Assembly (NCBI GenBank): GCA_035084275.1
Contig: CM068769.1
Coordinates: 6,696,001-6,760,000, forward strand
Source: Hydrolagus colliei
Taxonomy: Eukaryota
Length of the DNA stretch: 64,000 nt
Direction of reading: 5' to 3'
Position 1 is the stretch's first letter; the number at the start of each line of letters is the position of its first letter. Below, one piece after another: positions 23,659 to 62,465 of this stretch. A model generated the notes under the pieces. The model searched no databases, had not been told where the DNA came from, and worked only from the letters and a program-made list of their open reading frames with translations. Position numbers and translations under genes: made by a program.

Positions 23659-23764
23659 CTACACCATTAGTCTGTGCTCAAACTCCATTCTGAATCCAGA
23701 TGCGAATTTCTCAAGTTTCTTCAACTCTTCCTTTCCCTCTGAACTGATTGGATTCCCAGTCAAA
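23659..23764 (-). CDS. NLR terminal exon (last LRR and stop)
   Basis: Acceptor CTCTGTTTCAG, phase 2. Encodes (C)LTGNPISSEGKEELKKLEKFASGFRMEFEHRLMV*, an LxLxxNxI LRR cap in frame with exon 29570..29761. Confidence 0.8.
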
Positions 23765-24059
23765 CTGAAACAGAGATTTGGAGAATTATAGGGTTAAAAT
23801 ATTGGACAATTTTGAAAGTAGTTGACAAACAATAACAACAGCAACAATGTTACATTATTAGAGTGCTTTTCATGTCGGGCGGACGTCCCAAGGGACAATA
23901 TATTTCAGACACATTCTGTACAATTAATACAGTTCGTTAATATCCACGTGGACAATATGGAGTTAAATGTTACGCAAATAATTCCAAGATATTTAGGGTC
24001 ACGTTTCTGAGATACCACCCTATCCACACAGAGTTCCACGGGTTCTCTGTCTCTGGTTT

Positions 24060-27000
24060 CAGACAATAAGACCAAAAGAATTAGGAGCAGGAGTAGGCCA
24101 TTTGGCCCTTCGAGCCCGCCCCGCCATTCAATAAGATCATGGCTGATATTCTGCCCAACTCTAAATACCCGCCCCATCCCCATATCCCCGAATTCCTCTA
24201 TTTTTATAAAATCTAACCTTCTCAGCCTTGAAAACGTCCACGGACTGGGCAGCCACACCCTTCTCTGGTAGTGAATTCCATAAATGCACTACCCTCTGAG
24301 TGAAGAAATGTTTCCTCAACTCCATTCTAAATAGATGACCCTCAATTGTAAGACTGGGACACCTGGTTATAGATTCTCTTACCAGGTGAAACAATCCCTC
24401 AGCGTCTACTTTAGCCATCCCTTTAAGAATCTTATATGTTTCAATCAGATGCCCCCTAATTATTCTCTACTCTAGAGCGTACAGCCCTAGTTTATTCCAA
24501 CTATCCTCATATATCAGCCCCCTCAACCCAGGAACTAACCTAGTGAATCTTCGCTGCACCCCCTCTAAGGCAAGTATATCCTTTATAAAATAAGCAGACC
24601 AAATCTGCACACAATACTCTAGGTGCGGTCCCTCCAACACCCTTTACAGACTTCCCTAGTCTTGTACTCTAAACCTTTTGAAATGAACGCTGGAATGTCA
24701 TTCGACTTCCTATTTGCTTGCTGCACCTGCAAACTAAAATTTTGAGACTGGTGTACAAGGACACCCAAATCCCTATGAATACTAACAGTATCTAACTTCT
24801 CCCCCTCTAGAAAAAAATCATTTTTTTTGGTACCTGAATAATTTCACACTTCCCCACATTAAATTCCATCTGCCACCTACCTGCCCACTCCACTAGCCTA
24901 TCTATATCTTGTTGCAATCTTTTTGCGTCCTCCTCAGAGCTCACTCTCCTACCTAGCTTAGTGTCATCCGTGAATTTAGACTCGTTACATTCAATGTCCT
25001 CATCTAGATCATTGATGTAAATTGTAAATAGTTGAGGCCCAAGCACTCATCAAATGCCTTCTTAAAATCTAAATATATCGCATGTACTGGTTCCCCTATC
25101 TCCAACCTGCTGGATATATCTTCAAAAAACTCTAAAATATTAGTCAAGCATGACTTCCCTTTTGTAAAGCCATGGTGACTCTGCCTAATCTTTGTGTGGT
25201 TTACTCGGTATCCGATAACGACGACTTTAGTTAAGGAATCAAGATTTTTTCCTTCCATTGATGTCAGACTAACTGGTTTATAGTTCCCCATATTTTCTCT
25301 TCTTAAAGAGTGGAGTTACGTTTGCAATCTTCAAAATAATGGGTACTTTTCCAGGATACAGATAATTTTGGAAGATCATTGACAAGCCATCCACCATCTC
25401 AGTAGCCACCTCCTGTAAAACTCTAGGATGCATGCCATCCGGTCCAGGCGATTTATCAGTTTTAAGACCCGACAATTTACCTAAAACCATTTCTTTACTA
25501 GTATTTATCTTCCCAAGTTGCTCGATAACATTGTCTGCTTGGTTCCCCTCTATTTTTCGTATGTGTCAAGTGTCTTCTACAGTGAAGACAGTAGAAATAT
25601 ACTTGTTCAATGACTCTACCTTGTCTTTGTTCCCTATTACAATTCCCCCTGCCTCTGCCTGCAATGGACCCACATTCAACCTTGATAGCATTTTCCGTTT
25701 GATATACCTACAAACACTCTTGCTCTCTGTTTTTATGTTCTTCGATAGTTTGCCCTCATATATTATTTTCTCCTTTTTGATCATTTTTTTGTTTCTCTTT
25801 TGTTGTTGCCTAAAGTTCTCCCAATCATCGTGTTTACTACTCATCCTAGCTCTTTTATAGGCTTCTTCTTTTGACTTTCTATTTTCCGTAACTGCTGCAG
25901 TTAGCCACGGCTGGACCACCATTCCCATGGCATTCCTATTCCTCAAATGAATACGTGCTTGCTGAGAATTTTGCACTATCCCCTTGAATGTCTGCCATTA
26001 TTGGTCTATTGTCAAATCGTTAAGTTCAATTTCCCAGTTTATTCTGGCTAAATCCTTTCTCATACCAACAACGTTAGCTCTATTTAGATTGTAGACTTTT
26101 GCTTCGGATTAAACTTCTCCCCTCTCTAACTTAATGCTAACTTCCATCATATTATGATCACTTTGCCCAAGAGGAGCCTTAGGTTCCAGTTTGCTAATCA
26201 GCCCTGTTTCATTACTCAAAACAAGGTCTAATATGGCTTGTTCCCTGGTCGGCTCCTCGGCATACTGTGCCAGAAAATTATCTCTAATACATTCGGTAAA
26301 CTCCTCTTCTATGTTCACTTTCCCAATTTCGTTGTCCCAGTCTATATGCAGATTAATATCACCCACAATTAGTGTTTGTCCTTTGCTACCTGCTCCGATA
26401 ATCTCCTGATGTATACCTTGAGCGATACCTTGACTGCTGTTTAGGGGTTTATAACCTACTCCCACTATAGTTTTCTGCCTATTGAAGTTACCCATACTGA
26501 ATCTATACCTTGCTTTTCTGATTTAAAATCTTTCATCTCTACTGTTTTCATCACATCCTTTATTCGCAGGGCCACCCCTCCTCCTCGTTTACAACATTGC
26601 CTATCTTTCCTATATACCACGCAGCCGGGAATATATATTTCCCACCCTTGATCACCCAGTAACCATGTCTCGGTGATGGCTACTAGATAATAATGAGTGG
26701 TCCCTATTTGTCCATTTAATTCCCATTTCTACCTCACCATTTATTCGAGTAGCCGGATCGTTTGTCCCAGCCTTATTTAGGCGAAGCCCATTCCTATGGA
26801 TTAGCTCCCGTCTCCCCCAATACTGGTGCCCTTCGCCCATAATTTGCAACCCTTGCCTTCCGCACCATTTTTTTAGCCAGACATTCAGATCCATGTTTGT
26901 TTTTTTTTACCAATTAGGCCTCGGCTCAGGTAACGGTCCTGATAGTAACACCTTTGAGGTTCTATTTTTTTAGTTTAACTCCCAATTCCTGGAAGCTGCT

Positions 27001-27900
27001 TTTTAACTCGTGCCTACCAGTCCTACATATACTATTTGTTCCTACATGGATCAACACAATTGGATCCTCTCCCTCCTGCCCCAAATTTTTCTCCAGCCCG
27101 TCAGCAACATCTTTCACCCTGGCCTCAGGAAGGCACCAAATTATTCTTGTCTCTCTGCTATGCCTACAGAACAGTGCATAAGTTCTCCTGACTGTCTCAT
27201 CCCCAAATAGAACTACATTTATTTTCACCATTCCTTTCTGTTTGGCCTCCTGAACAGAGTTGTTTGGGTCAGTTTTCCCATCCTCCTCAAAGATTGCCTT
27301 GTTCGCACAGGTTGCAAGTAGTACATACCTGTTAGATAAGGCGAAAGCCAGAGATTCGTATGCCCCTCTCTTTCGGGAACCTTTACCCACATGTCTGACT
27401 GTCACCCATTCCTGTCCATGGCCGCTGTATGTTTCTTCCTTGGGACTTAGGGGAGTGTCTGGCTCCAGGATGAAACAGTAAAGGAAGCTCTCCCCAACCC
27501 TAATGCTGCGCAGCATCTCCAACTGAGACACCAGCTCAGCTATTCTAAGTTGGAGCATTCTCCGAAGCAGACATTTCCTGCAGTTGAAATCACCCAGGCT
27601 CAGATTGCCCTACATCAACTCCCACATGCCACATTCCTCACACATCACCTGCCAGATCGTTCTCTCCTCTCACTATCCTTCTCCCTATATTATTATCGTT
27701 AGCAAGTATACAACCTTGCACCTACTTCCCACTCTGCACGTAAATGCCACTCTCACCCAATTCCTTCTCACTCTGCCTAGCTCACTCTTTTTGCGGCTAT
27801 CTGATCGAGTAAGGCTCCCGCAGCTATCCGCTACATATACCCTCCGGATTCAACAAATCTCTGATTGGTCAGCAGTATTTTACTATTAACACCTAATCAT
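24060..27900 (-). mobile_element. Near full-length decayed CR1 LINE (ORF1 with esterase-like domain; ORF2 endonuclease-RT) in the last NLR intron
   Basis: ORF1 EGEDPIVLIHVGTNSI (26962..27558). EN LIVGDINL...DLVLSNE...SDHN (26109..26495). RT NYKPVSLTS...HHGFTKGKSCLTNILEFF...KAFD and LGPQLFTIYINDLD...FTDDTKL. C-terminus and 3' end at ~24060-24420. Many frameshifts and an internal deletion after KAFD. Confidence 0.93.
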
Positions 27901-29569
27901 GTGATTAACTAGCTACAGCTGCACCGTACAGAGTTATGCAACAAGAACAATCCACCAATCTATCAAAGGTAAACAGTCAACCAATCTACTAATCTAACAC
28001 AATTTTAAATTATAGTGGCACTACCAAACCCAATACTTGAATACTCACGCGTAGCAGTCCCCACAGCGATTCCCATTCTCACCAAATTCCATCTAACTCG
28101 TGCCGAGCTCACTCTGGCCGTGCCTCTCTGCTCGAGTCAGGAACTCTTTCGCACATACAATTCCCTTCATGCTCCATCGCTTCCATTGCTCTCTGGCCTC
28201 GCGTATACCGGTCCTCTCCCCATCCCCTTTTCTCATTTGACACAGATCTGCTGTGTGTCCACCGACCCATCCATGCCACCATCCATGCTCGAGCCTACCG
28301 ACACTATGACCCTAACTTCTGCAGGTCCCTGTCTAATCCATTTGTTTTACGTCTATTTGTTCAACTAATTTAAATCGTATTTTATGGTTTTCTCGATTAA
28401 CACAACAATGGCCACCCTCCCCTGTGTAGTAAACTTGTGCATCAAAATGCCCGCCGGGCTCCAGCAGACTATTTTGCCTGAAGGAGACTATTTAATGGCA
28501 AAGTATTCTTATTTAGACAGACACATAATGTGAATGGGCAGAATAGATATCAGCTTGGCTCGGTCTACAGTACTCTGAACTGAGTTAGTTGAGTTGCTTA
28601 CGAGAGTGGGGATGGGATGTAGCATGCAATTTGGCATGGAAAGCTCTGATAGATATAAGATACTTAGAGTAATAAATCATAATCTTTTCATCTTTCGCTT
28701 GAAGAGCATATATGTAAGTCATTCCGAGTGTTACTTTAAAGTAGAGCTATTGGGTATTTTGAAGCGGGTGTGGCAGTGAATTTCTAACGTATAATTTCCT
28801 GCAAATATTCAGAATCAACAATCAATTTACATGGGCAGAAATTACATTTTATTTGTGGAAAATTGTCATGGGTCCATTGACTTCCACATGAACAGCCACA
28901 TAACTAATTATGAAGAGAAAGGTGTTGGAAGATTTATGAAGGAAAATGAACATATATTCAGTCTAGTGTCCTGTGGACAATTCAGTTGAATTGTGAAGAC
29001 CCGTTGCTCAGCGGTTGTTGTATCACCTCACAAGCGAGTACCGAGGATGGGTACAAATTCTAATTGTGCTCATGTGATTTTTCGAACTGAAATGAATCAA
29101 TTGCTGGATAGTCCATGAGCTGCAGAGTTCTAGTTAATGTGCAACTTGTTAATGAAAGTGTTGGGAATTATGGAAACTAGAGATGTGGTGCAGCCAGTAA
29201 TAATAATATTAATAATCCTTTCATTTGAAATTGCGCTTTTCACAACTTCGGGGCGTCTCATAGCTGTTCACAGAATATCCTTTAAAATGAATTCACTGTA
29301 TATTTGTGTGCAAATATATAGCCAAGCCGTGATTTGATAAATATATGGATTTGTGGAATTTAACCCCATATCAGTAGATGATATTGCTGAGCTAGGTATC
29401 AAAGAAGGGATCGAATGAAGTGTACTGAGGAATGCTGCACATTACACTGTTTGGGATATTTTCCAAAAAACACAGAAGATAATATTCTGCTTGTGAACAT
29501 TGCAAATATTAATTAAATTCTAATTGTGCTCTTGTGATTTTTCAAGCTAAAGTTAGAAAAATAATTTAC

Positions 29570-29761
29570 CAGATGGCTTTTAGATTTTTACATTTCTCTA
29601 CGAGTTTCCGAAAAGCTGGAACCGATCTCTCTGTGAAGGAATTCCCACTGTATGTATATGGATAATCAGAGCTCAGATTGATGTTCTCCAGTGATGGCAA
29701 GTGGCAGAGTGTTGAGCAGAGATTCTCAGCGCAGGCATCAGAGAGCTGGTTTTTTCCCAGA
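29570..29761 (-). CDS. NLR LRR exon
   Basis: 192 nt, phase 2-2, canonical AG/GT. Encodes (S)LGKNQLSDACAENLCSTLCHLPSLENINLSSDYPYTYSGNSFTERSVPAFRKLVEKCKNLKAI, i.e. ribonuclease-inhibitor-type LRRs. Confidence 0.9.
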
Positions 29762-30679
29762 CTGTGTGGGTAAGAAATAAGATACAATAAGTATCGGGTA
29801 ACATGGGTTTCATATCAACAACAAAACTGAAGATTTTATAGAAATTCAACACATAATTTGTAATACGAACATCAATTCATAAAGACAACAGCAAGCATTT
29901 ATTACATGCACATTTCTTCAAAACTTTAAAGTCAAATCTATTGCAGCACGATATATGAACGTGTCAAAAAATACTGTTGTGAAACGCTATCGTACAATGA
30001 ACCTTATCATGGTTGATCTGTACCAAATATCATGAGGTTCTGCTCAGCAAACACCAGTTTGTAAGGCTCTCTTTCGACTGCCAAAGCAACATTGCTTTGT
30101 TGTCGCAGAATTTCATTCTCACAACATTATCAACATTCAGGAGCCACAAATAGACATGAAAACATTGAAATGTGGAAAGGGAACTGGACTTGAATGTATC
30201 CATTTTTTTACAATTCGAGAGAACAGAAATGGATGCAGGACTGTTTCAACTCTGGCATGTAGAAAACACATGTAACTAATTATTGTCAAGGCAGGGCACG
30301 GTGGTTGCACTTTAAAAGCAACTCCGTAACGACTCAAGAGCTAATTAAGACTTAAGAGCATACACTTCGCTCAGACTTGAAGCAAAACGAACACAGAGGC
30401 AGAGCCTGAGACCAAGCCACTGGATGGGGGAAAGTGAAGCTCAGCAAAGTCAAAAAGAAAGTTTTTCAGCAGTGTCCTCAAGATGGGAATGGTTGGCTGC
30501 TTACGCCACTGTGAAGCATCCTGCATTTCTGCTGGTAGTAATTTGAGAGTGAGCAAAACTGTCAAAGCTATCTCCTCGTTGATTTGTCGATGCAGTAAGT
30601 TTGGTAACAATAGAACTGATTTCCTCAAGGCTCAATGCTGTTGCCGCTGCTGTTTAACGCCAACACTGACAAGCAAAAT

Positions 30680-32000
30680 TATACTTGTATAACGCCATTC
30701 ACAAGGGGGGCACCGCAAGGCGCTGGACAATCCCTGTTTCAGAACCGACCTGACGATAGGGGGTTTAGGAAAGGTGAGATTAGGAGTTTCCGATTCGACT
30801 ATCAAAGAGCGAAGTCTTGAGGCAAGACTTGAAGCACACAAGGTAGGGGTGAGGTGAAATGACTGTGGGATTGAGTTCCAGAGATTCGAGGCAGATTGTG
30901 TAATTGGTCGCCAGCCAATGGTCGGGCATTTGGGTCGGGGGACATGGAGCATGCCAGAGCCTGCTGAGTGGAGGTGGTGGGCAGGTTGGTAGGGGGTTAG
31001 AAAATCACGGATCTTCTAGCAGACCACGTTGGGGGCGAGCATTTGGAGGACTTTACATGTGAGGAACAGTGTCTTGAATTGAAGCCTCTGGACGATGGGC
31101 CGCCAATCGAGTCAGGCGAGGATGGGGAAGATGGGATCATGGAGGTTGAAACGGAACAGTAAACCGACTGCAGCGTTCTGGATCATCTGAAACCTATGTA
31201 GGAGGAATTGGGTAGGCCGACGAGCAAGGCATTTGCAAAATTGAGCTGGGATGTAATGAAGACATGAATGAGGTTTTCAGCGGTTTTCGGCTTGAGGTAT
31301 TGGCGGAGTAGGTCAATGTTTCGGAGATTAGAAAAGGCAGAGCGAGGCATTGCCTGCATGTTGAGGAGGAAGACAGTTGAGGATCCAACATGACAACGAG
31401 GTTCGTTACTGGCTTGTTGCGATTGAGTGAGCAACCGTGGAAGATGATCAGGATGGAGCCTGATATGTGAAGGCACGAAGCAATCAATAGACCAACATAA
31501 ATGACGATTGTCGGACTTGTGTAGATTCACTTTCTGCACTTTACAATATATTTTGTAAGAACAACATCCTGCATTTTCTAGCGCCCTCCAAGCCGGGTGG
31601 CATCTCAGAGTGATCCACAACGGTGGAGCCAGAGGACTAGGCAGGAGGAAAGGAAAGGTAAGCGTGATCAACGAGCCAAGTCTTCAGGCACGACCTGATA
31701 ATGGTAGGGAGTCGAAGGGGTTGAGGTTCGGATTTCCACAGTTTCGCGAAATAGTGGCTGAAGGTGTGGCCAGTGATGGTGGATTCGTCGACAAGGAAGA
31801 GGTATGACTCAGTAGAACAGAGGCATCGGGAACTCTTTCTTGTCCCGAAACCTGGTTGTGCCGGGTTCGGACAGTTTTAAAGACAGGTCGGGAATATTGA
31901 GGATGTAGGAACTGTGAGGCAAAAGATGTTGAAGAAGTGAAGTGTATTGGGACGTACTCCCGATATGAAAGGCGCACATAATTGTAGTTTTGTTGTAGTG
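30680..32000. mobile_element. Nested L2 LINE fragments in NLR intron
   Basis: L2 peptides such as YLKPKTAENLIHVFITSQLNFANALLVGLP and ASNLWNSIPQSFHL... Confidence 0.8.
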
Positions 32001-34080: not shown

Positions 34081-34389
34081 AAATGTATCCACATTCAATT
34101 TCATACTTACTCCAGTGTCTGTATTGTACAATTGTTCATATTGTTACCCAATATCGCACAAAGTTGGTTCACTCCTGCATCTCGCAGCGTGTTGTTCTTC
34201 AGCCTAATTGAAAATAATGAGTGCAATGAGTGTAGATAATTCTAAAGATAAATAACATTAATGAACGAAAATAAATTTCATTGCCTGTGAACTTAAAAAG
34301 TGTTGTCCTTGCTAAATTTCAATGCAAAATAAGTAAGTATCTGATCTGATATCTGGTATCTGCGATCAGATGAAATTATCAAATGTAGA

Positions 34390-35368: not shown

Positions 35369-37079
35369 CTTAACTGTTGGCATTTGTGTAGTATGGGTGC
35401 CAGTCGCTGGATCCCTTCCTCTTGTACAGAGCAGTTATTCAGGTTGAGTTCCTCCACATGCTCACATGGTCCCAGCACAGTCGCCAGCATAGTGCAGTCC
35501 ACAGGACTGAGCGGCAAACTCACAAAATCCACTTTCTTCATTGATTTGAACACATCCCTCATCAATTCTGTCTTACTGGATTCAAACAGAAGGTACAGAG
35601 CGTTCAACAATCTTGTTTTGTTTCCTGGAGTTTTTATACTTGCTTTAACTTCTTCCTTCAGCCAATCCATAACTGTCCTGATCGCATCTTGAGGAAGTTC
35701 ACCAATAACCTCTGTCAAATATTGAGTTGAATATTCAGAGGAAAGGCCAATTAAAAATCGGAAAAATATATCAAATCGACCATCCCTGTATTCTTGTGCT
35801 TCCCTCAGTATCCCTGTCAGGTTTTTTGCATCTGAACTTTTGAGGATCGCAAATGCGGCCAAAAACTCCTGAACCGTGATGTGAATGAACGTGTGAACAT
35901 TGTGTTCAGTCGCTTCATCTTTCACCAGGATTTGCATCATAAAAACGGAGGTGAAGTGAGATGGTTTCAGTTTCACACGCGTAAAATCGTCATCATAAAA
36001 TACAACTCTCTTTCTGCGGATTCCCACATGAGCCATCCCACCCAACTTCACTAAAAGATCACGATTCTCTACAATGTCACCGCCAGATCTTTGTAGAAGC
36101 CCTGATATGTAGTTTGAGTACAGCTGTGTGATGGTGCCTGGCAGCTTTCTCTCTGTATTATTTTGGTTGATGAGAGGAGCCAGTGTTGAGCAGAGGATGG
36201 AACAGTAGAATGGGTTGTAGCACATGGTGAACAGGACATCGTTGGTTTTCACATATTCATAAGCTTCTTCAGCGGTTTCACTCTTTCCAAAATATTTATT
36301 GAAATAATCCTTTATTTCTTCGGAAAAGAAACCTAAGATTTCTGCCCAGAGATTGGTCTGCTCCATACTGAGTGACCTCAGATCAGTTGGTCGGCTGGTG
36401 AGCAACACTGAACAGCCTTTGAGCAGCTTCCCCTGCACTAGACATCGTACAATGTCAGACACCGCACCTCGACTCTCAGGTTGTAAGCATTCGGTGCGTG
36501 TAGTGCTCACCTCATCACTGAAGTTAATATTCCCGGTAAATTCATCTAACCCATCAAGTGTAAACAAGATGGTCTCTGGCTGTTTCCACAGATTGGCAAG
36601 ATGGCCATTAAAATATGAATATTTATGCAGCAACATCTCATTCAGGCTGGTATGTGTTTCAGTGTTTTGAATGTCTCGAAATTTAAAATGAAAAACAAAG
36701 TGGAACTGTGGATACAGCTTTCCTTGTGCCCAGTCATAAACTACCTTCTGCACCAGAGTAGTTTTCCCGACACCAGGAATCCCAATAACAACCGCAGTTC
36801 CTGATGTACTGCGTCGTCCAAAACTGCTTCCGAATAATTGATCGTATCGAATTCTTTCCAGTTCTGAATTCATGTTTTTCTTTTGTAAGTTTTCGTGTTC
36901 TCTGCCCCGTTTCAGTAATTCATGCTGCACATGTTTTTGCTCCCGAGCAGATGAGATTACCAACTCTGTGTATTGGACATCGATTGAACCATCTCCTTTG
37001 TTCTCTCCTTGTTTATACTTGTCTATGTGAAGCTTCTTATGTTTCTTGCAAAGGTCATCTTTGTGGCGCTTTTGAATGT
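35369..37079 (-). CDS. NLR large exon: FISNA-like linker, NACHT NTPase, winged-helix/HD2 and first LRRs
   Basis: 1711-nt open exon, CTGCAG| phase 1 to phase 2 |GTACTG. Starts (D)IQKRHKDDL...YTELVISSAREQKHVQHELLKRGREH. Walker A GIPGVGKT, Walker B ILFTLDGLDE, SVLLTSRP, FIHITVQEFLAA; ends LEELNLNNCSVQEEGIQRLAPILHKCQQL. Confidence 0.96.
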
Positions 37080-40021: not shown

Positions 40022-40087
40022 CTGCCAGATTGTCCGGTATTTGGGAACTCATTCCTTTTCCAGTTGCATCATTTAACAAACCAGAAC
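40022..40087 (-). CDS. NLR exon C2 (66-nt linker of second N-terminal module)
   Basis: TCTCAACAG| phase 1-1 |GTATGT. Encodes (G)SGLLNDATGKGMSSQIPDNLA and joins the NACHT exon in frame. Confidence 0.85.
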
Positions 40088-40195: not shown

Positions 40196-40367
40196 CTTTA
40201 TCCACAATTTCTCTCAGTATTTTGCTCAGTTTTGGCTTGGATTCCTGTATCTCCGAAAATATTTCCCACATGGTTCTTAATGACCCATCTCCTCCAATGA
40301 ACATCAGATTGAAAAGATATTTAGAGGCGTCAGATTGCTGACCCTTTATAGCTAAATCTCTCACTTT
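40196..40367 (-). CDS. NLR exon B2 (C-terminal half of second CARD-like domain)
   Basis: TTTTCAG| phase 0-1 |GTACAC. Encodes KVRDLAIKGQQSDASKYLFNLMFIGGDGSLRTMWEIFSEIQESKPKLSKILREIVDK. Confidence 0.9.
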
Positions 40368-42773: not shown

Positions 42774-42931
42774 CTGAAGTTCATCTATACCCATTTCCTG
42801 TTTTCTGTATAAATACAAGGCCACATCTGGAACAAATTCCTGAATCGCTTCTTCCAGTCTCTGCCGGTGGAACTCGGTGATTCTGAGCAACTCATGTTCA
42901 TTGTAACCGTCCAACATGTTTTTAATTCCAT
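42774..42931 (-). CDS. NLR exon A2 (N-terminal half of second CARD-like domain)
   Basis: GTTTTAG| phase 1-0 |GTTGGT. Encodes (D)GIKNMLDGYNEHELLRITEFHRQRLEEAIQEFVPDVALYLYRKQEMGIDELQ. Confidence 0.88.
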
Positions 42932-45242: not shown

Positions 45243-45411
45243 CTTCATCCAAAATTTCTCTCATTATGTTGCTGAGTTTCAGCCTGATATCCTTTGTCTC
45301 AGCAAATATGTCCCACAATGTTCTCACTTTACCTGGCCCAGCATGCAACACCAGAGTGAATATTAGGTGGGCGGCATCAAACTGTTGAGAGTTCGAAAAC
45401 GCTTTCACTTT
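45243..45411 (-). CDS. NLR exon B1 (C-terminal half of first CARD-like domain)
   Basis: TTTTCAG| phase 0-1 |GTATGT. Encodes KVKAFSNSQQFDAAHLIFTLVLHAGPGKVRTLWDIFAETKDIRLKLSNIMREILDE; paralogous to B2. Confidence 0.88.
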
Positions 45412-48347: not shown

Positions 48348-48514
48348 CTCAAAATCGTATAAGTTAATTTCGCGTCTTCTGAGTAACTCTTTGACCACGT
48401 CCTGAACACACCTCACAATAGCTTCTTCCAATGGCTGCCGGTGCTTCTCGGTGACATTGTGCAGCTCTTGGTCATTGTAACCTTGCAGCTTCCTTATAAT
48501 CGCATCACTCACAT
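48348..48514 (-). CDS. NLR exon A1 (N-terminal half of first CARD-like domain)
   Basis: CATTTGTAG| phase 1-0 |GTGGGT. Encodes (D)VSDAIIRKLQGYNDQELHNVTEKHRQPLEEAIVRCVQDVVKELLRRREINLYDFE; paralogous to A2. Confidence 0.88.
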
Positions 48515-49572: not shown

Positions 49573-49574
<2 letters not shown>

Positions 49575-53133: not shown

Positions 53134-53488
53134 AGTTTCTGTTGGAGCCCGGCAGTGTAGTCAACCACTGTGGTGAGACTGAAGGCACAGTGATACACTG
53201 CGCTGTCAGATACCAGCAGCTCAGAGATGGATAAACTGGTGATAGAACTAGATTCCTGCAGCTCAGCAGCGAAACGGTTTCCAAATCCTGTTCGTTTCAC
53301 TAGATGTCCATCACCAGAATATATCTCCAAACTATAAACTCTGGGTGTTTGTCTGGGTAACGTCTGTACCACAAGAGATAGTAAATGTTGGCAGTAGTGG
53401 TGTAGGTACATATAACATTGGCAGCTTTTCCTGCTTTCTTATCCATCGTCGGCAGCTTTCTGACTGACAGAATCGGCGTCACAGAGTT
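53134..53488 (-). pseudogene. TCR alpha/delta-type V pseudogene V1 with intact 23-RSS
   Basis: V exon 53173..53488: ELCDADSVSQ...NVICTYTTT..YYLLWYRRYPDKHPEFIVWR...TGFGNRFAAELQESSSITSLSISELLVSDSAVYHCAFS. A +1 and a +2 frameshift flank an in-frame TAA. RSS CACAGTG (53166-53172), 23 bp, ACAGAAACT (53134-53142). Leader not found. Confidence 0.92.
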
Positions 53489-54680
53489 CTGGAAGAAACC
53501 AGGAAAAGCACCGTGAAATATTATACAACAAATTCACAGTTGATTTGTCAGCAGTGGAACAAAAGTTTGCAGTACGTTTTACACAGCGTGTTATAGCATC
53601 GTTGAGACGCCTTAATGCGCTGTCCAGAATATGCAATCAAGTGATAAACTGTAGATTTTAACGCCAGAACATGTCAGCTAGTTTTGCACAGCGGTGCCTC
53701 ACAAAGTCTTGTGGGTTGAGTTACTTAAACTATTATTGAAACATACATAAGGCATTATTACCATCGGAAAAGATATCTGCCTGTCTGGAAAACAAAGGTT
53801 AAAATCGAGAAATAAATATTATTTTTTTATTATTAATGTGCAGGTTCAACCACGTGATAAAACCCCTAAATTCCTATATTCAAGTTCCTGGTCCTCAGAT
53901 ATAAAGCCCTCCACAACCTAGCCCCACCATATGTGACTCCTAACCCTTTACTAACCTGACCTCCCCCTCACTCTGCCCAGCAGTCTCTGGTCTGCTCCAT
54001 GTACGCCTATCCTTCCGCATTACCATTGACGGGCGATCCTTAACCACTCTGCCCCCAACATTTGGATCTCCATCCCGCAGTCCTTCTACCTCGCCGCGTT
54101 CACCGGCCTCTTTCATGTCTCGTCTCCAGATTCTCCTCTTTAATTGACCCATCGGTAACTCCTAATCCATTCTCCGCACCCACTGTCCTCAGCTTGGATC
54201 TGAAGCAGTAACCCCTGACGTGAAAGGCACTATACAAATGTAATTTTGTTGTTGCTATTGTGTATTGGACAGTTTCTTTACTGCGGATTAGTTAGGAGTT
54301 TCGTTTTGGAACAAAGTTGAAATAACTTTGCGAGCTGGAGGTGAAGATTTGCACATGCCTCGCAAACAGTACCAAAATTATTGTCCTTTACACGATTAGT
54401 CTACAGATAACATAATTTAAATATACATTGTATTTGCAAACTGACTTAAATGAAGTGGACATCTGGACCTGTAGCGCCTAACTCGTTCACTAAGTGCTGT
54501 CTGCATTTATTGTAAAGGATAATGATGTGAGAGTTTAGCTGACAAGCTGATGGGAGGGGAATGTGGTTTCCTGCGAGTCTGGCTGCTGAAGTATCTGCTC
54601 CCCGCAGGGCCTCAAGGCCTGACCAAGATTCCGCACAAGTTTCAAACAGACAGATCGTCCCCTATGATTAATATGAGGAC

Positions 54681-55507
54681 AGTTTTTGTACGAGCCCTGC
54701 AGTGTAGTCAACCACATTGGTGCGACTAAAGGCACAGTAATACACTGCGCTGTCAGAAACCAGCAGCTCAGAGATGGATAATCTTGTGGAAGACTAGATT
54801 TCTGTAGCTGAGCAGAGAAACGGTTTCCAAATCCTGTGCCTTTGACTTGATAATTATTCTGATAAGATCTCCAGACTACAAACTCTGGGTGTTTGTCTGG
54901 GTAATATCTATACCAGAAGAGTAAGTAATAGCTATTAGTCGTGAGGTATTTGCAAACCAAATCGACAGTATCTCCTTCTTTCTTAAACACCGGGGCAGCA
55001 TTCTGACTGACAGAATCGGCGTCACAGAGCTCTGTAATAAACGATGGAAAGCATAGCTAAACATTCATGGAAACATAGAATCTTAAGGCACAAAAGGAAG
55101 CCATTCTGCCCATCGCGTCTGTGTCGGCTCTTTGAGCAGAGCAATTCAATCTCACTCCTCAGCTCTCTCTCCCCATAACTGTGCAAAAATGTCGTCCACA
55201 ATTAAACATCTACCTCTCTTTTAAAATATACTTTTGCATCGGCTTCCCCCACCGTTTCAGGCAATGCATACCAGATGCCAACAACACGATGAATGAAAAA
55301 ACGTTTCTTCAACTCCCCTCTACTTATTTTAGAAAATAGTAGTTCATCTCAATTGCGAACTGATTGCTCTGTCCATTCAGCTACAGGCTCCCTCCAACAA
55401 TTGTTGTTGAAATGGAGCTGACAAGCAGCAGCGACACTGAATTAGCTCAACACGACCTCACCTGCCGTAAAGGTTCCCAGCACTAGACAGACAGCAAACA
55501 GCCTCAT
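54681..55507 (-). pseudogene. TCR alpha/delta-type V pseudogene V2 (paralog of V1)
   Basis: Leader 55462..55507 MRLFAVCLVLGTFTA|GTGAGG. V exon 54720..55031 with a 1-nt deletion in FR3. Heptamer mutated to CAATGTG (54713-54719), 23-bp spacer, nonamer ACAAAAACT. CR1 fragment in the leader intron (~55072-55330). Confidence 0.92.
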
Positions 55508-55538
55508 TGCTGCTCCTCAGCCTTCGCTGTTGTGTCTG

Positions 55539-55577
55539 TGACATCAGTTTTGTGGAAACCAACAGCAATAGGCGTCA
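55539..55577 (-). promoter_or_regulatory. CRE-like motifs in the V2 promoter
   Basis: TGATGTCA (55539-55546) and TGACGCC (55571-55577) lie 32-70 bp upstream of the leader ATG. CRE-like elements are established in TCR V promoters. Similar TGACGCA at 57033 (V3) and TGACGTC at 62779 (V5). Confidence 0.55.
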
Positions 55578-56391
55578 TTGGCAGATCCCAGAGTCCTCGG
55601 ACACCTCATTGACATCTCACACTTGCTTCAACAACAGCAACGGATTGATTTTACCTCATTGACATCTCAGTTGCTTTTACATTGTGCAATACAAAATTAC
55701 TGTCTGTGTTATTGCGGCGGGGGTGGGTGGGGTCGTGGGCCGGTGCGAGGTGGGGAGCAGGGAATCCTCCCACGCAGCTCTCGGTAACCTTACAATCAAA
55801 CCTGACAAATATACATTCCATTAACTTAACCGTATATATTCCGTGAAGCGCTTTGGAACGTCGATATACTGTGAAAAGCGCTATCTTGCATTTATAATCA
55901 AATGCAATTATTATTCATATTATTCTAATCCAATCAATGATGGGCATGAACATGGGATTAGTTTACACACACACATAAGGATAAAGCGTTTTTAGTTTCA
56001 CTCCATGTAATGTTTTGTATTAATTCAAACACTTCATCCATTTTATAGCTCAACGGCGGTTAGCACTTTTATTTAGATTTCTAAAAGTTGTAAACTTACA
56101 TTGTTAATCCGTTCGAATTTCTTCATTGATCCCCAGTGTTGATTTGCGCATTATTTATTTTCATAAACAGCAGCTTTAGAATAACAGTTATTTAGTTTGT
56201 TATAGTGAGGTTAAATAATTCCCTACATTAAGCCATGCGACTTGCTTTATTGTTTTATTGCCCTTGTTTTATTGCATGTGGTTGGGAATTAATCACGTGG
56301 ATCTTCTGAGAGACACAGCAGCAAAGTAAAATAGGTCAACTGACAGGAATGACATCTGTGCCGTGATTAAACCCATTAACTCCTCTTTGAA

Positions 56392-56430
56392 GGTTTATGT
56401 ACGGTTGTGTAGCCTGAAGGTAACACTGTG
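56392..56430 (-). other. 23-RSS of V3
   Basis: CACAGTG (56424-56430), 23-bp spacer, ACATAAACC (56392-56400). Confidence 0.92.
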
Positions 56431-56879
56431 CGAGTGATCCCACAATAGTATGTGGCTGAATCAGATAGAGCCGCAGCCAGCACAGTTACAGTGGATGTCT
56501 TGCTGTTCGTGTCCAAACTAGTGGTGAAAAGACCTTCAGCAAATTTAGCTCTGAAAGTGTCACCATCATAATCATGTCTCAGTGTGTACAGAGGAGCCTG
56601 GCCTGGATACTGACGGTACCAGTACATCACAACACCGGTGAAACCAACAGAGTAGGTCCATCTCAGTATCACAGTCTGGCCTTCAGTGACAGACACTTCC
56701 CTCTGTGATGGTTCAACATTATCTCCATTCGCTGTCGCTGTAGACAGAAAGAACAAGTTATTCACTGTAACGCACATACCAGAGCTAAATCTCCAAACGG
56801 CCTTCAGAGCGAGAGTAAATTACTTACATAAAAGGACCAATAAGATTAAAATGATCAAAGCAATGTGTTTACTCTTCAT
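56431..56879 (-). CDS. TCR alpha/delta-type V segment V3: open frame but first-Cys replaced by Trp
   Basis: Leader 56828..56879 MKSKHIALIILILLVLL|GTAAGT, 90-nt intron. V exon 56431..56737 STANGDNVEPSQREVSVTEGQTVILRWTYSVGFTGVVMYWYRQYPGQAPLY...DSATYYCGIT, with no stops. Confidence 0.9.
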
Positions 56880-57329
56880 GTTTCCATGCGAGCAAGTCAT
56901 TCGATGGGAGCTTTTTGAGATGAGAGATTGTGGCCTGAATTGTGACTCAAAGCAGAGTGAGGAGCAACACATACGCCTCTGTGTCAGATGACTATAGTTT
57001 CGAACCGGATTTGTGAAACATAACTAGTCAGATGACGCACCAACGCCTAGTGACTTAGAAATAACAATGGAAATTTCTTCTTGTTGTTCTGCCAGTTTAC
57101 TGTTATAATCGAAGTATAATTTTTCTGCGCTCCTTCATCCTTTCCCGACCCCTCCCGCCGTATTCTTGTCTCTACTCAACTGTACATCCCATTGGGACTG
57201 TCCTCTCGACGTGAATGTCGCTGTATAAATGATGTACTAAATTGTGAAGTCCTATAGATCAGTGGTTAAAATAATCATATCACAGGCGATACACAAGGTA
57301 GTGTAATTAATTTGTTTGATGGAAACATT

Positions 57330-58210
57330 GTGGTAATAAGAAATATAATCATTGCGTTTCGCATAGCGCTTTTCACAATTTGTCGATAGCACAAAAAGCG
57401 CTTCACACAATATACTATTAAGTGAATTAACTCTATACTTGTGAGCGAAAGCGGAAGCCGGTTGCGGAAAACAGCGTCCCACACAAAGAATCGATGATTG
57501 AAATGTAAAATGTTATTGTTGCTTTGTCGTTGGTGCGATTACGATTAGCCGTCTGGAGTAAAGAAACTTGCCAAAGGTTTCGCCCTCACCTACCTGGATA
57601 CAATCAATCAATGAATCAATCAAAACTTACATTTCCACAGCGCCTTTCACGTCGAGAGGACGTCGCAAGGCGCTGTACACTTAGGTAGGGACAAAAGTAG
57701 GGAGAGTGGACTCGGCGCAGGATGAAGAAGAGTAGGAAATTTGACTGTCTATTTGTGGGCGAAACGCATCAACCGAATTGCGCAAAGCAGTGTCCCGTAA
57801 ACAGTAATAGAATTGGGACAAAGGTAAAGGCGCTGAAATATGGCAAGAGGAGGTGTCGGGGTAAGTGGGTAGTGGGAACGAGAGTAGGAACGCCGACTGT
57901 ATACTTGTGGGCGAAACGTGGCAGCAAATTGCGCTCAACCGTGTCCCAGAAACAGTTGGAGAAATGGGGCCGGAGGAAAGGGGGAAAAGAGGGCAAGGGT
58001 GGAGAGGGAGGGAAAGGTGAGGTGGGGAAACGTCAGTTAGGAAGAGGGTGGAGAGAAAAGGTGTAACGGAGAGAGGGAGGGAAAGGCGTGTGGAGGGCAA
58101 GATCAGGGAGAAAGGGATGTCTGAGGGAAGAGAGGGGGAAGGGCAAAAGAAGGGAGAACACAACTCTCACACTTGTAAGGCGAGTGCTACAAACATTGAG
58201 TTCGATAATG
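57330..58210. mobile_element. Nested SINE/L2 fragments with purine-rich tract (57950-58150)
   Basis: Several SINE bodies, heads and tails on the - strand plus an L2 tail at ~57620-57680. Confidence 0.7.
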
Positions 58211-59914
58211 GTGTTTGTGAGTGAAAGGCAATGAAATACATCAATTGACATAGAAATTCAATTTTGATCAACAAAAGCCTTTTGATACTTGATGAGGATT
58301 TGTGCAACTCGGACCAAGAAGCAACAGTGCATTTGAGGGAAACAATATCAACTGTAAAAGGAAACACCCATCAGAGCTGTCAATGTCATTAGTTACAGAA
58401 AAGCAAGTGGCAAGTTACAGCAATGGAAACTCATGTTACACGGGTGCTTAGTTCGCCACCTATTGGTGGCTTGCAGCTACAGCAGGTGTGTAATGGAGAT
58501 ATTTATAGCAAATTGTTTTATGGCTGTCTTGAATTCGTTTGTCGTTTCTACTCCCGTGGAAGCATATACATTCGTCTCGTTCCCTGCTTGTTTCTCATGT
58601 TTTCCCAGCTTTACTAGAAAATAGGAAGCGAATTTATTCCGCAATCACTTGGCGTATTCGTGCTTATATTTGAGCCCCCCACCAATCATTAACGCTCACC
58701 ATACCCAACAATTTAATTTAGTTATTTGATTACTTCCTCTGCCTGTTTAGATTATTTGACTGAAAATTCACAATAGTCAGGTTACAGTAAAGTAAATGTA
58801 CATTTATAGAGTGTCATTCGCATTGGGAGTTCCAAATGCACGATCTTCACCAGGCAAAATATATATTGTAATAATAAAATAAGTAAAGTATTTTCATTGT
58901 ATATTTCTATATCAATAATACAGCTCGTGTTCTCCCTTTGCATCGCCAATAGCTATCAACGTGTGTTTAGTGTGTACTTTAATTCCAGGCGTTAATTGAA
59001 CTAATTATAGCTGGGCAACTTGAATTCGATTAATAAGCAATGCATGCCTCGTTCGCAGAATATTCTCAATATCATGTTTTGGACAGATTATACATCAGTG
59101 AACCTCAATGTGCTTCTGAATCACATTCATGTTACAGCATTAATTACAGTCAGTCTTGAAGCATTCCATGTATTTTGTCACTGGGAATAAAACTCGGCCC
59201 TAAGCTTTGCAAATTTTCGATTAAATCCATCTCCATCTCCATCTCCCCCTTCTCCCATTACCTCTCTTCACAATCGCCCTAAATGTCTTTCTATAGGATA
59301 GTTCCTCTATGATGAGGAAGCGTTATATAAATATAAACTTGTTGTTGTTGTTCCGTGTTCCCTCCACTCCCCGGTGGAAAGTTTCTCTGACACTTTAGGA
59401 CTTAATTTATATTTAAACAACACAAAATTAGCTTGGTGATTTTTAAGTTTTCCTACTTATTCATTTACCACAGAAAAGCACGTACAAGTGTCAGCACTCT
59501 CCGTACACGAAAAGGTTTGCAGGTATTTCCGCGACAATAACATGATTGAATATATTAATAATTATTGTGGTAATTCTTCCAATTGATTAAATTTGCAAGA
59601 CTGCATGGAATATATTGCAAATCAATTCACTATGTATTGAGTGAACAAAACGGCTGCCAATTCATCTCACCAGTTATCCATTGGTTTGAATGTTCAGTTT
59701 GTTGTTGGTTGTACAGTAGTCTTATTCTCAAACCGTTATTATTATTCGATTAAGGGATGATGATCCCTAACACCTAATAACCCAGTTGACATCCAAGCGG
59801 GTTCCTAGTTACCGCGAGGCAAACAGAGGCGTGTGGGTAAAATAAAGAAGGTTTGTGTACAGTACAGAATATTTTGCTCTGCAATGAATGGAACCCAGGT
59901 GTTCTCGCTTGCAA

Positions 59915-60764
59915 CGATTTTGTACGGCTGGAACACTGATTTGTGCGTCTGTGGGGCTCAGCGCACAGTAATACACAGCAGAGTCTGTCACTGTCACTAA
60001 GGATATATTCATTGGCACGGTTCGCCGCGCTTTATCCAAATTCGTTGAGAATCTTTTTTGTGCAAATTCTGCAGGATATTCCTTGTTGTTCCTGGTGTAT
60101 ACGTAAAGGATGTATTCTGGAACTGTGTTGGGATAGTGACGGTACCAGTATATATGCATCGCTGCTGCTTGTAACTGTGTAATTACACAGCAGATAGGCA
60201 TTTTCCCCTTCATTCACTGTCACAGCAGGTTGGAGCTGTGTCACAGAGTCTCCTCCACAAAGCCCTGGAAACGCAAAAAAATACATCATCATTTAATACA
60301 CGAGCAACAATTCCAATCGTCCGCTTGTGTTTCACACGGCGCTATGTCGAGTCGTTGATACGTCTCCAAATAATTCACAGAATAAAATGAGCACAAAACG
60401 ATTTAGTGTGTAATATTTCGCCCTGTTCTGCCAGGGAATCGAACCGTAGTCATCTCGACTGTGAAGCCAGTGCTATCAACAATGAAATAATGAACACTCC
60501 AAATCCTGAAGCTCTTTTTGTATTATTATATAACGTATGCGATAAAACATAGGCATTGGATAATACTTTCGGTAACAAATACAGATAGAATGCTAACCTA
60601 ACAAGGCAACGATGACTACTGCAACATGGATATGCATTGTCATATATATTTAACGACACCATTTGCAGAAAGAACGTTGTAGTGTATGTGAAGAATGTCG
60701 TCTGGGAGGCAGTTAAGATACCGTGAGGAAGGCTGAACAGTAAATGGCATACAGCAGTTGCCAT
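59915..60764 (-). pseudogene. TCR alpha/delta-type V pseudogene V4
   Basis: Probable leader 60722..60764 (MATAVCHLLFSLPH, phase 1). V exon 59954..60264 GLCGGDSVTQLQPAVTVNEGENAYLLCNYTVTSSSDAYI/YWYRHYPNTVPEYIL...DSAVYYCALS, with one frameshift in a (TA) run before Trp41. RSS CACAGAC, 23 bp, ACAAAATCG. Confidence 0.9.
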
Positions 60765-62145
60765 ACAATGTGCGGGAGCAGGTCTGAGGTTTATGTATAA
60801 CCATGTTTGTTTATGTCATTCAGTGTCATTTGCTCTTCTCTGGCATCTCGCTCCTCCATTGGTTCTCCTCCAACACTGACATGTCTTTGATGATCCAGGT
60901 GTCTGACACATGCACCAACTTACACCAATAATTCTGTAACAATTCATTCAAACACTTAAATAATATTCACGTAACTGTACTATCTGCGCTTTCCTTTTTC
61001 TTAGTGGTATCAACACTCACTCCACAAGCAACGTGCCTGTGTTAGATTCTTGTAGGGCGAAATCTTAGATAAGTTTCCTTACTCTAACAACCTGATTTTG
61101 TTTGCCCAGCTATCAGTAGCAGTTCGACTATTTTTTGATTGATCTGATTGTGTTCCAGTGATAATAATCATTCATAAATTAAGCTATTGAATACAACACT
61201 GTTGGTGTGCCATTGCTGTGCACAATTGGCTGCCTGGTCACTATATTTTACAGTGTAGACTATGAAGCGATTATTGGCAAAATCTGGATCGAGGTATTCA
61301 GTGGAAGACACTGGGTATGTACACAGGGCTAGACAATTGCCTGATGTGTGTTGGCTTCACATTCCCTGGGGCAGCTGGCAATTGGGTAACTAGGAGAAAC
61401 CAGCTATTGAGAGGGTTTCAAAGCAAAAGCGGAGGAGTCACGTGGCGTCATGAGTTTCTCAGATGTCTCTGCCACAGTTGGTTGAACGTTTCCTTCCTGG
61501 CTTCTGGGCTACAGCATTTTGGACGCTCAACACCCATTTTCCCAGCATAATTCATGCCTGCAAAGTACACGTGGTGCATTTTATTTCGCTGTGCTCAGCT
61601 TCACATATTAACATTCGTATTTTTAAACGGTGTGTCTGAAACATTGGGAAATCCATCTAAATAATTGTGTTTGGAGTATCTGCATCAAACCGTGTATTGC
61701 AATTTTCCTTAGTTTTGATATACTATCGTACCGTGTCTTTGAGCCGTCGCTAAGCGTTTCACACGATATACTGCAAAGTTTAGCATTGTTGTATTTCGTG
61801 GCAGAGAACTAAACACAGCATCGTCTGACAAAAAATGATGGATCGAGGCACAATTTTTGTTTCATGGATTATTAAACGCTGGAAAGCTCTCCACTAAATG
61901 ACTGCCACTATGGAGCCAACTTACTGCTCGGCAGAGAAATATTAATAATAATAATAATACTTGTATTTGATATAACACCTTATGAATTCTATGTGACATT
62001 ACAATGTGCTTTACATGTTGTACAGTGTAGTGAGGTAACTGTACATGTTACCGGCTGTATGTGACAGCCAGCTGCACACAGCAGTGTTCCACAAACGCTC
62101 ACGGAACGAAAAGGCGAGTGGTATATCCAGTGAGCCACAGTAGCA

Positions 62146-62465
62146 TGTTTGTGTACAGGCTCCTCTTAGACACGCAGCACTGTGCTCTCTGCTGCACAGA
62201 TGTAAGTGGCGGTGTCTGTCACTCGCACGTCTCTGACTGTCAGTGTGCTGTTCTTCTCTTTTGTATCAGCCAAAGTACTTATCCTCTCCTCCGCCTTTAC
62301 CTCCCTTTTTCCCAACACCAATAATCATATGGAGCCATTTCCATACTGTGTGTACCAATGAAAAGATGGGTTGAGCAAAGTGGTGTTGCCATCTATATAT
62401 ATTTCCATTTTCATTCCCTGTCAGTAACAAAGGTCTCTGTGACACTTCGCTTTCAGCCAAGACAC
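62146..62465 (-). pseudogene. TCR alpha-type V pseudogene V5 with canonical 23-RSS
   Basis: Acceptor TTTTCCAG at 62466. GVLAESEVSQRP...; frameshift and loss of first Cys; FHWYTQYGNGSI*LLV...STLTVRDVRVTDTATYICAAE. RSS CACAGTG (62178-62184), 23 bp, ACACAAACA. Confidence 0.88.

What the first reader, a model, noticed from the sequence alone, without database searches (positions are those of the whole stretch)
23659..62465. Intact NLR gene sits directly 3' of a TCR V array on the same strand
Seen: the five V segments point toward lower coordinates, with RSS on their low-coordinate side. The NLR begins less than 5 kb past V1's RSS, and no D, J or C lies in the remaining 53 kb. Established: V-(D)J joining in same-orientation loci deletes the intervening DNA, and non-TCR genes can be embedded in TCR loci (trypsinogens in mammalian TRB). 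Inference: if J/C lie beyond the left edge, this innate sensor, the RPUSD4 fragment and the GPCR would be excised in T cells on any allele rearranged through an upstream V, giving lineage-specific loss of an NLR. Otherwise these V segments are an orphon or edge cluster inside an NLR/GPCR multigene region.
Basis: partly seen in the sequence, partly recalled or inferred. Interest (0 to 1): 0.7.

Follow-up and report, generated by a model that had tools for sequence, protein, structure and literature searches.

The report
Decayed TCR V cluster beside NLR gene
Five T-cell-receptor V gene segments sit just upstream of an apparently intact innate-immune NLR gene in a cartilaginous-fish genome, but all five V segments are damaged and no J or C segment is in view, so loss of the NLR in T cells remains untested and looks less likely than a relic V cluster.

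Summary
The anatomy is largely real. Five V-set segments lie on the minus strand (V-exons 53173-62465), each followed on its low-coordinate side by an RSS with a 23-bp spacer. Their closest named relatives are TCR alpha/delta V regions.

An NLR gene lies on the same strand. Eight exons (48514-29566) have AG/GT splice sites and splice into one open 909-codon frame: two CARD-like modules, NACHT-WH-HD2 and a short LRR. No J, D or C element was found in the other 53 kb. The RPUSD4-like fragment and the GPCR also exist.

Three corrections:
- No V is canonical. V1, V2, V4 and V5 carry frameshifts or stops, V3 has Cys23 replaced by Trp, and the heptamers of V2 and V4 are degraded.
- The NLR coding sequence ends at 29566. 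The stretch 23.9-27.6 kb is a LINE.
- The NLR starts within 5 kb of V1 only if the upstream CARD-like module belongs to the gene, and no ATG exon was found.

Whether the NLR is excised in T cells depends on flanks outside the window. Uniform V decay favours an orphon or decayed edge cluster. Non-TCR genes inside V arrays are already known, so interest is modest.

The parts
62146..62465 (-). V5: V-exon 62465-62185 plus 23-RSS (CACAGTG / 23 / ACACAAACA). Pseudogene: frameshift between FR1 and CDR1, in-frame TGA, no Cys23.
59915..60264 (-). V4: V-exon 60264-59954 plus 23-RSS with a weak heptamer (CACAGAC / 23 / ACAAAATCG). One-base frameshift in CDR1 within CATATATAC. No ATG leader within about 250 bp upstream.
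   Evidence: Pfam V-set 9e-17
56392..56879 (-). V3: leader exon 56879-56828 (MKSKHIALIILILLVLL, donor GTAAGT), V-exon 56737-56431, canonical 23-RSS (CACAGTG / 23 / ACATAAACC). The frame is open but Cys23 is replaced by Trp (TGG), so it rates as 'ORF', not functional.
   Evidence: Pfam V-set 1.5e-10; 65% identical to Callorhinchus V proteins that keep the Cys
54681..55031 (-). V2: V-exon 55031-54720. One-base deletion in FR3 relative to V1 puts Cys104 out of frame. The heptamer has lost CAC (CAATGTG / 23 / ACAAAAACT).
53134..53488 (-). V1: V-exon 53488-53173, canonical 23-RSS (CACAGTG / 23 / ACAGAAACT). Pseudogene: +1 and +2 indels relative to V2, and a stop at about codon 13. It is an 86% nucleotide-identical duplicate of V2.
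48348..48514 (-). NLR exon A1: first half of the upstream CARD-like module. Entered in phase 1, left in phase 0. AG acceptor, GTGGGT donor.
   Evidence: weak Pfam CARD hit on A1+B1 (E 5e-4)
45243..45411 (-). NLR exon B1: second half of the upstream CARD-like module. Entered in phase 0, left in phase 1, so it is in frame with A2.
42774..42931 (-). NLR exon A2: first half of the second CARD-like module, 68% identical to P0001.
40196..40367 (-). NLR exon B2: second half of the second CARD-like module.
   Evidence: AlphaFold2 pLDDT 93.3; best Foldseek matches are CARD domains
40022..40087 (-). NLR short linker exon (GSGLLNDATGKGMSSQIPDNLA).
35369..37079 (-). NLR main exon: NACHT with Walker A GIPGVGKTT and Walker B LFTLDGLDE, plus winged helix and HD2.
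34111..34203 (-). NLR LRR exon 1.
29566..29761 (-). NLR terminal LRR exon, ending ...KNLKAIW followed by TAA. Homologues P0002 (ending KNLKLIR), P0003 and P0007 end at or within about 13 residues of this point.
23900..27609 (-). Degenerate LINE, not part of the NLR: ORF1-like 26965-27609, endonuclease 26112-26522, RT 25007-25315, 3' tail 24164-24466.
15900..16103 (+). RPUSD4-like fragment of 68 aa. The RluA motif reads HRQD instead of HRLD. No other exons were detected.
11690..12688 (+). Intact single-exon class A GPCR. The nearest solved relatives are NTSR1 and GPR139. It is not olfactory-receptor-like.

Best explanation
The window holds two unrelated immune gene families lying side by side.

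The first is a small, decayed cluster of five rearranging TRA/TRD-type V segments: four pseudogenes and one open frame lacking the first cysteine.

The second lies 4.6 kb downstream on the same strand. It is an apparently functional NLR of the NLRP-related family that is expanded in cartilaginous fishes. It reads two CARD-like modules, then NACHT-WH-HD2, then a short LRR.

The V cluster is most likely a relic, either an orphon copy or the eroded edge of a V array. It no longer contributes productive TCR chains.

The adjacency is most likely a by-product of birth-and-death duplication in a transposon-rich region, not a functional coupling.

Shown here: the anatomy, the V defects, the RSSs and the open spliced NLR frame. 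Inferred: relic status, absence of functional coupling, and that the upstream CARD-like module is part of the NLR transcript.
For: - V-set domains with 23-RSS sit exactly 3' of the second-cysteine region in five of five segments.
- The hits that carry a TCR or Ig chain name are mostly TCR alpha or alpha/delta V (10, against 3 Ig heavy or lambda names and 3 other V-set receptor names). No TRB or TRG names appear among the 120 listed hits.
- Every V has at least one disabling defect, and V2 and V4 also have degraded heptamers.
- There is no J, D or C in the window.
- The eight NLR exons all have AG/GT sites, compatible phases, and one 909-codon frame with a single terminal stop.
- NACHT, WH and HD2 are detected by Pfam, and the best homologue matches at 1.8e-247.
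- The N-terminal module folds as a CARD-like helical bundle.
- Tandem copies of this module precede NACHT in shark and ray predicted proteins, for example from Mustelus and Pristis.
- A published whale shark analysis reports an expanded NLRP-related NLR family (PMC8455134).
- Three shark NLR paralogue loci and two shark TRA-V loci show no V-NLR adjacency within 10 kb.
Against: - Three RSSs (V1, V3, V5) are still canonical, and V3 keeps its leader, splice sites and open frame. The decay is therefore not old, or the segments may still be recombination substrates.
- Pseudogene runs also occur inside genuine loci.
- In mammals non-TCR genes do sit between the 5'-most TRAV genes (PMC4574546). A 53-kb stretch free of V segments does not prove the locus has ended.
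- The flanks are unseen.
- The V4 frameshift lies in a short TA repeat and could be an assembly error.
Confidence: 0.55

Rival explanations
1. The NLR, the RPUSD4 fragment and the GPCR lie inside an active TRA/TRD locus, between these V segments (plus further V segments to the right) and D/J/C to the left. Deletional V-(D)J joining through any V to the right then excises the NLR on that allele. This would give T-lineage-specific somatic loss of an innate sensor.
For: - All five V segments and their RSSs point left, and three RSSs are canonical.
- The arrangement is translocon-like, as in TCR loci: five tandem V segments 1.5-3.5 kb apart with no interspersed J or C.
- There is precedent for embedded non-TCR genes (PMC4574546, PMC12698447).
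Against: - No J, D or C, and no second V block, lies anywhere in the 53 kb to the left.
- All five V segments are defective.
- None of the usual TRA/TRD flank genes named in PMC12698447 (METTL3, SALL2, DAD1, ABHD4) was noticed. They were not searched for by sequence.
- No V-NLR adjacency was seen in the sampled shark loci.
Confidence: 0.27
2. The cluster belongs to a TCR locus, but the partner J/C segments are in the opposite orientation or to the right. Joining would then be by inversion or would not span the NLR, and the NLR would be retained in T cells.
For: Inverted V clusters that rearrange by inversion are reported in non-mammalian TCR loci (PMC12698447). Nothing in the window fixes the position of J/C.
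Against: No direct evidence. The same objection applies that all five V segments are defective.
Confidence: 0.1
3. The frameshifts are assembly errors and the V segments are functional members of the repertoire.
For: The V4 shift lies in CATATATAC and the V5 shift lies near an (AT)n run.
Against: - V1 has two separate indels plus a stop, and V5 also has a TGA and lacks Cys23.
- The V2 indel is not in a homopolymer, and its heptamer has lost CAC.
- The V3 defect is a substitution (TGG), not an indel.
- Five independent defects of different kinds are unlikely to all be artefacts.
Confidence: 0.05

Closest known systems
Olfactory receptor genes interspersed among the 5'-most TRAV genes of human, mouse and sheep TRA/TRD loci (PMC4574546)
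   Same: Non-TCR genes lie next to same-orientation V segments of the alpha/delta type. They would be deleted only on alleles that use a V lying upstream of them.
   Different: In mammals, V segments are documented on both sides and J/C downstream. Here there is no TCR element on the far side within 53 kb. The neighbour here is an NLR, and the nearby GPCR is not OR-like.
Trypsinogen genes embedded in the TRB locus (mentioned in PMC12698447)
   Same: A non-TCR multigene family sits inside a rearranging locus.
   Different: It is a different locus type, and embedding is proven there. Embedding is not shown here.
V-gene orphon clusters outside the main locus, such as the human TRBV, IGHV and IGKV orphons (own knowledge)
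   Same: Short runs of V segments with recognisable RSSs, without J/C nearby, essentially all pseudogenes or ORFs.
   Different: Orphon status needs the chromosomal position relative to the main locus. That cannot be seen from this window.
The NLRP-related NLR family expanded in whale shark (PMC8455134), and shark and ray 'NLRP3-like' predicted proteins with tandem CARD-like modules (Mustelus asterias XP_078087540.1, Pristis pectinata XP_051865185.1)
   Same: The NACHT-WH-HD2 core is 44-52% identical. They share the same about 110-aa CARD-like N-terminal module, sometimes in tandem, and the short-LRR variants end at or near the same point.
   Different: This copy is a new paralogue. Its best relative is 69% identical and has a single module. 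No PYD is present despite the automatic 'NLRP3-like' names.
NOD2 (tandem CARD - NACHT - LRR)
   Same: The inferred architecture is two death-fold modules ahead of NACHT and LRR.
   Different: The NACHT is closer to proteins that the databases' automatic names call NLRP3- or NLRP12-like. The tandem arrangement in the transcript is inferred from exon phases, not observed.

Membership tests
Rearranging TCR alpha/delta V gene segment | Ig V-set domain | tested here: met
   Pfam V-set E 1.5e-10 to 9e-17 on V2, V3 and V4. Four ORFs match V-set in the whole-window scan.
Rearranging TCR alpha/delta V gene segment | RSS (heptamer, 23-bp spacer, nonamer) directly 3' of the second-cysteine region | tested here: met
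   All five have a 23-bp spacer. V1, V3 and V5 have CACAGTG. V4 has CACAGAC and V2 has CAATGTG, both degraded.
Rearranging TCR alpha/delta V gene segment | Open V-exon with Cys23, Trp41 and Cys104 in one frame (functional by IMGT criteria) | tested here: not met
   V1, V2, V4 and V5 are frameshifted or carry stops. V3 has Trp in place of Cys23.
Rearranging TCR alpha/delta V gene segment | Closest relatives are TRA/TRD V rather than Ig, TRB or TRG V | tested here: inconclusive
   Ten listed hits are named TCR alpha or alpha/delta; three carry Ig heavy or lambda names and three other V-set receptor names; none is named TRB or TRG. These names are automatic. PDB searches did not separate V-alpha/delta from VH. 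No tree was built.
Rearranging TCR alpha/delta V gene segment | Linkage to TRAJ/TRAC or TRDD/TRDJ/TRDC, and use in rearranged transcripts | not testable with these tools
   No J, D or C in the window. Flanks and repertoire data are not available.
NLR (NACHT-LRR) protein | NACHT NTPase with Walker A and B, followed by winged helix and HD2 | tested here: met
   Pfam NACHT 5.4e-34, NOD2_WH 4e-10, NLRC4_HD2 2.8e-16. GIPGVGKTT and LFTLDGLDE are present.
NLR (NACHT-LRR) protein | C-terminal leucine-rich repeats | tested here: inconclusive
   Pfam LRR_6 reaches only E 0.011, below threshold. The two exons do align to the LRR ends of homologues, at E down to 1e-11.
NLR (NACHT-LRR) protein | Complete coding sequence from ATG to stop | tested here: inconclusive
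   Eight exons give an open 909-codon frame ending in TAA. The initiator exon was not found. Only two weak candidates exist, at 48767-48674 and 43766-43730.
NLRP subfamily (as in the automatic names of the homologues) | N-terminal pyrin domain | tested here: not met
   No PYD hit in Pfam. The module is CARD-like instead: Pfam CARD E 5e-4 (below threshold) on the upstream copy, and the best Foldseek matches are CARDs (ARC, CARD8, NLRP1-like, NLRC4; target-normalised TM 0.7-0.8, E-values weak at 0.4 or more).
Non-TCR gene embedded in a TCR locus | TCR gene segments on both sides of the gene | tested here: not met
   V segments lie only on the high-coordinate side. None is found in the 53 kb below V1. 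Beyond the window this is not testable.
V orphon cluster | Location outside the main locus | not testable with these tools
   This needs the chromosome context. The secondary expectation, that all members are non-functional, is met.
RPUSD4 / RluA pseudouridine synthase gene | Full catalytic domain across several exons | tested here: not met
   Only one 68-aa piece matches, covering positions 34-79 of the 152-position Pfam profile, and HRLD reads HRQD. No other exons were found.

The most novel reading that the evidence does not exclude
An intact CARD-type NLR lies inside a working chondrichthyan TRA/TRD locus, between V segments and D/J/C. It is physically deleted from the genome of T cells that rearrange through upstream V segments. 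That would be a somatic, lineage-restricted knockout of an innate immune sensor.
Probability: 0.22. Interest if true: 0.55.

Novelty: new member of a known kind. Interest (0 to 1): 0.3.

Why it matters
If the NLR proved to lie between functional V segments and J/C, it would be the first innate sensor known to be removed somatically by V(D)J recombination. It would also be a natural test of whether T cells need that sensor.

As the evidence stands, the value is mainly for annotation:
- a relic cluster of TRA/TRD-type V segments;
- a new paralogue of the NLRP-related NLR expansion in cartilaginous fishes;
- support from exon phases for a tandem CARD-like architecture.

Deletion of embedded bystander genes is already known for olfactory receptor genes in TRA and trypsinogen genes in TRB, so the principle itself is not new.

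Tried and rejected
- **Initiator exon of the NLR.** A local alignment with the first 20 residues of P0001 found nothing. A scan for ATG exons ending in a phase-1 donor gave no strong candidate and two weak ones.
- **Further LRR or C-terminal exons between 23659 and 29565.** None was found. That interval is a LINE.
- **Typing the V segments through the PDB.** The hits were dominated by multi-domain scFv constructs. V-alpha/delta and VH were not separated.
- **Synteny.**
  - The plus or minus 10 kb around three shark NLR paralogues (Heptranchias, Cetorhinus, Mustelus) contains no V and no GPCR.
  - Two shark TRA-V loci (Cetorhinus, Heterodontus) contain no NACHT.
  - These genes are paralogues and the spans are short, so the negative result is weak.
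This is a rough proxy only.
- **RluA motif regex for RPUSD4.** It missed the fragment because HRLD reads HRQD. The fragment was then found with a sequence recalled from memory and confirmed independently by Pfam.
- **tRNA scan for a SINE upstream of V4.** Nothing was found.
- **Literature.** Searches for NLR genes in TCR loci of cartilaginous fishes returned no report.
- **The GPCR as an olfactory receptor in conserved synteny with the mammalian TRA 5' end.** Rejected. The nearest solved relatives are NTSR1 and GPR139.

Full report
**Source and scope.** The window has no N runs. Every close protein relative found comes from cartilaginous fishes. The V segments are closest to Callorhinchus milii proteins (65% identity). 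The species is not identified.

**The V segments.**
- Six-frame translation, Pfam and tblastn find exactly five V-set segments, all on the minus strand.
- V-exon and RSS coordinates:

| Segment | V-exon | Heptamer | Nonamer |
|---|---|---|---|
| V5 | 62465-62185 | CACAGTG | ACACAAACA |
| V4 | 60264-59954 | CACAGAC | ACAAAATCG |
| V3 | 56737-56431 | CACAGTG | ACATAAACC |
| V2 | 55031-54720 | CAATGTG | ACAAAAACT |
| V1 | 53488-53173 | CACAGTG | ACAGAAACT |

- Every spacer is 23 bp. Each RSS starts a few codons after the second-cysteine motif, which chance would not produce five times.
- I searched a profile of the five segments against 5.8 billion proteins. The hits with TCR or Ig chain names are mostly 'T cell receptor alpha chain' or 'alpha/delta variable', including three sharks and rays. 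A few carry automatic Ig or other V-set receptor names, and none is named TRB or TRG.
- Five tandem V segments 1.5-3.5 kb apart with no J or C between them is a translocon layout. From my own knowledge, chondrichthyan Ig genes are instead organised as V-D-J-C clusters.
- I therefore call them TRA/TRD-type V segments, with the reservation that PDB searches could not separate them from VH.

**State of the V segments.** None is canonical.
- V1 differs from its 86%-identical duplicate V2 by a +1 and a +2 indel. It meets a stop at about codon 13.
- V2 lacks one base in FR3, so Cys104 is out of frame. Its heptamer has lost the essential CAC.
- V4 changes frame inside CDR1. It has a weakened heptamer and no ATG leader within about 250 bp.
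- V5 has a frameshift, an in-frame TGA and no Cys23.
- V3 is the best preserved. It has a leader exon (56879-56828), a GTAAGT donor, an acceptor, an open frame and a canonical RSS. However, Cys23 is TGG (Trp), whereas its Callorhinchus relatives keep the Cys. In IMGT terms that makes four pseudogenes and one ORF.
- The defects are of different kinds, and most are not in homopolymers. Assembly error is therefore an unlikely general explanation.

**The NLR.**
- A 621-codon open exon (37079-35369) carries NACHT, a winged helix and HD2. It matches shark 'NLRP3-like' proteins at up to E 1.8e-247.
- Using the 69%-identical homologue P0001 as a guide, tblastn places further exons. Inspection of the junctions gives eight exons with AG acceptors, GT donors and matching phases.
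- The exons are A1 48514-48348, B1 45411-45243, A2 42931-42774, B2 40367-40196, a 66-nt linker 40087-40022, the NACHT exon, LRR exon 34203-34111, and a terminal exon 29761-29566.
- Joined, they read as 909 codons with one stop at the very end. The end, KNLKAIW followed by TAA, falls at or within about 13 residues of where homologues P0002, P0003 and P0007 end.
- A1-B1 and A2-B2 are two copies, 44% identical, of a two-exon module of about 110 aa.
- With an alignment of homologues, A2-B2 folds with pLDDT 93.3 into a helical bundle. Its best structural matches are CARD domains (ARC, CARD8, an NLRP1-like CARD, caspase-1, NLRC4), with target-normalised TM scores of 0.7-0.8 but weak E-values.
- A1-B1 gives a sub-threshold Pfam CARD hit.
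- The module starts and ends in phase 1, so A1-B1 splices in frame to A2. Predicted proteins from Mustelus, Pristis and Hemitrygon have two or three such modules ahead of NACHT. These two points make a tandem-CARD transcript plausible, but it is inferred.
- The ATG exon was not found.
- The gene fits the expanded NLRP-related family described in the whale shark (PMC8455134).

**The rest of the window.**
- The interval 23.9-27.6 kb, which the finding's coordinates include, is a broken minus-strand LINE with endonuclease and RT hits. It contains nothing homologous to an NLR.
- A 68-aa RPUSD4-like piece lies at 15900-16103 on the plus strand. It matches Pfam PseudoU_synth_2 and has no companion exons.
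- An intact class A GPCR lies at 11690-12688 on the plus strand. It is nearest to NTSR1 and GPR139, not to olfactory receptors.
- No J, no D-like element and no constant-domain family was found. The only clusters of heptamer-like sequence are a 27-bp minisatellite at 14409-14923.

**Interpretation.**
Deletional joining removes whatever lies between the V used and J. Bystander genes inside V arrays are documented: olfactory receptor genes among the 5' TRAV genes (PMC4574546) and trypsinogen genes in TRB (PMC12698447).
- The window cannot show where J/C are.
- What it does show is uniform decay of all five V segments and 53 kb of non-TCR DNA beyond them. That shifts the balance toward a relic cluster, either an orphon or an eroded edge.
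- Three canonical RSSs keep the excision scenario alive.
- Limited sampling of shark loci showed no V-NLR adjacency. Those NLR genes are paralogues and the spans are short.
- My estimates are about 0.55 for a relic cluster with no functional coupling, about 0.27 for true embedding with deletion, and about 0.1 for a locus arrangement that spares the NLR.

**Verdict.** The components are new members of known kinds. Interest is 0.3.

Noticed in passing
48514-48348 and 45411-45243 (minus): An upstream duplicate of the NLR's two-exon CARD-like module, 44% identical to the copy next to NACHT. Its splice phases keep it in frame. Shark and ray predicted NLRs carry two or three such modules in tandem.
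   Followed up: yes
14409-14923: A 27-bp minisatellite of about 18 copies (ACACAGTCACTACACTGTGACCCTCAA). Each unit contains RSS-heptamer-like CACTGTG and CACAGTC but no credible nonamer. It lies in a GC-rich low-complexity block at 13.7-16.1 kb.
   Followed up: partly
15900-16103 (plus): The RPUSD4-like fragment keeps the catalytic Asp, but the motif reads HRQD instead of HRLD. It sits beside (GT)n repeats. It looks like a lone pseudo-exon.
   Followed up: partly
17227-17846, 30635-31015, 50044-50691, 63706-63999 (all minus): One interspersed repeat family whose translation carries ...PTIGGRAFS..APTLWN.IP..LR.... There are four copies in the same orientation, one of them between V1 and the NLR and one in an NLR intron. 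The family was not named.
   Followed up: no
17936-18205, 24164-24466, 33260-33526, about 55100-55300 (minus): LINE 3'-tail fragments with the motif FFTQRVV..WN.LPE.VV. One lies between V2 and V3 and one in an NLR intron.
   Followed up: no
60440-60520 (minus): A tRNA box-B-like motif (GGTTCGATTCC) just upstream of V4, where the leader exon would be expected. It may be a SINE insertion, but ARAGORN calls no tRNA.
   Followed up: partly
L001:880-1038 and L001:9240-9449: In the Heptranchias perlo locus, the CARD-like module exons lie upstream of the annotated start of NLR protein P0002. That gene model appears to be truncated at its 5' end.
   Followed up: no
53173-53488 and 54720-55031 (minus): V1 and V2 are 86% nucleotide-identical tandem duplicates. 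They were disabled by different indels, so they decayed independently after the duplication.
   Followed up: yes
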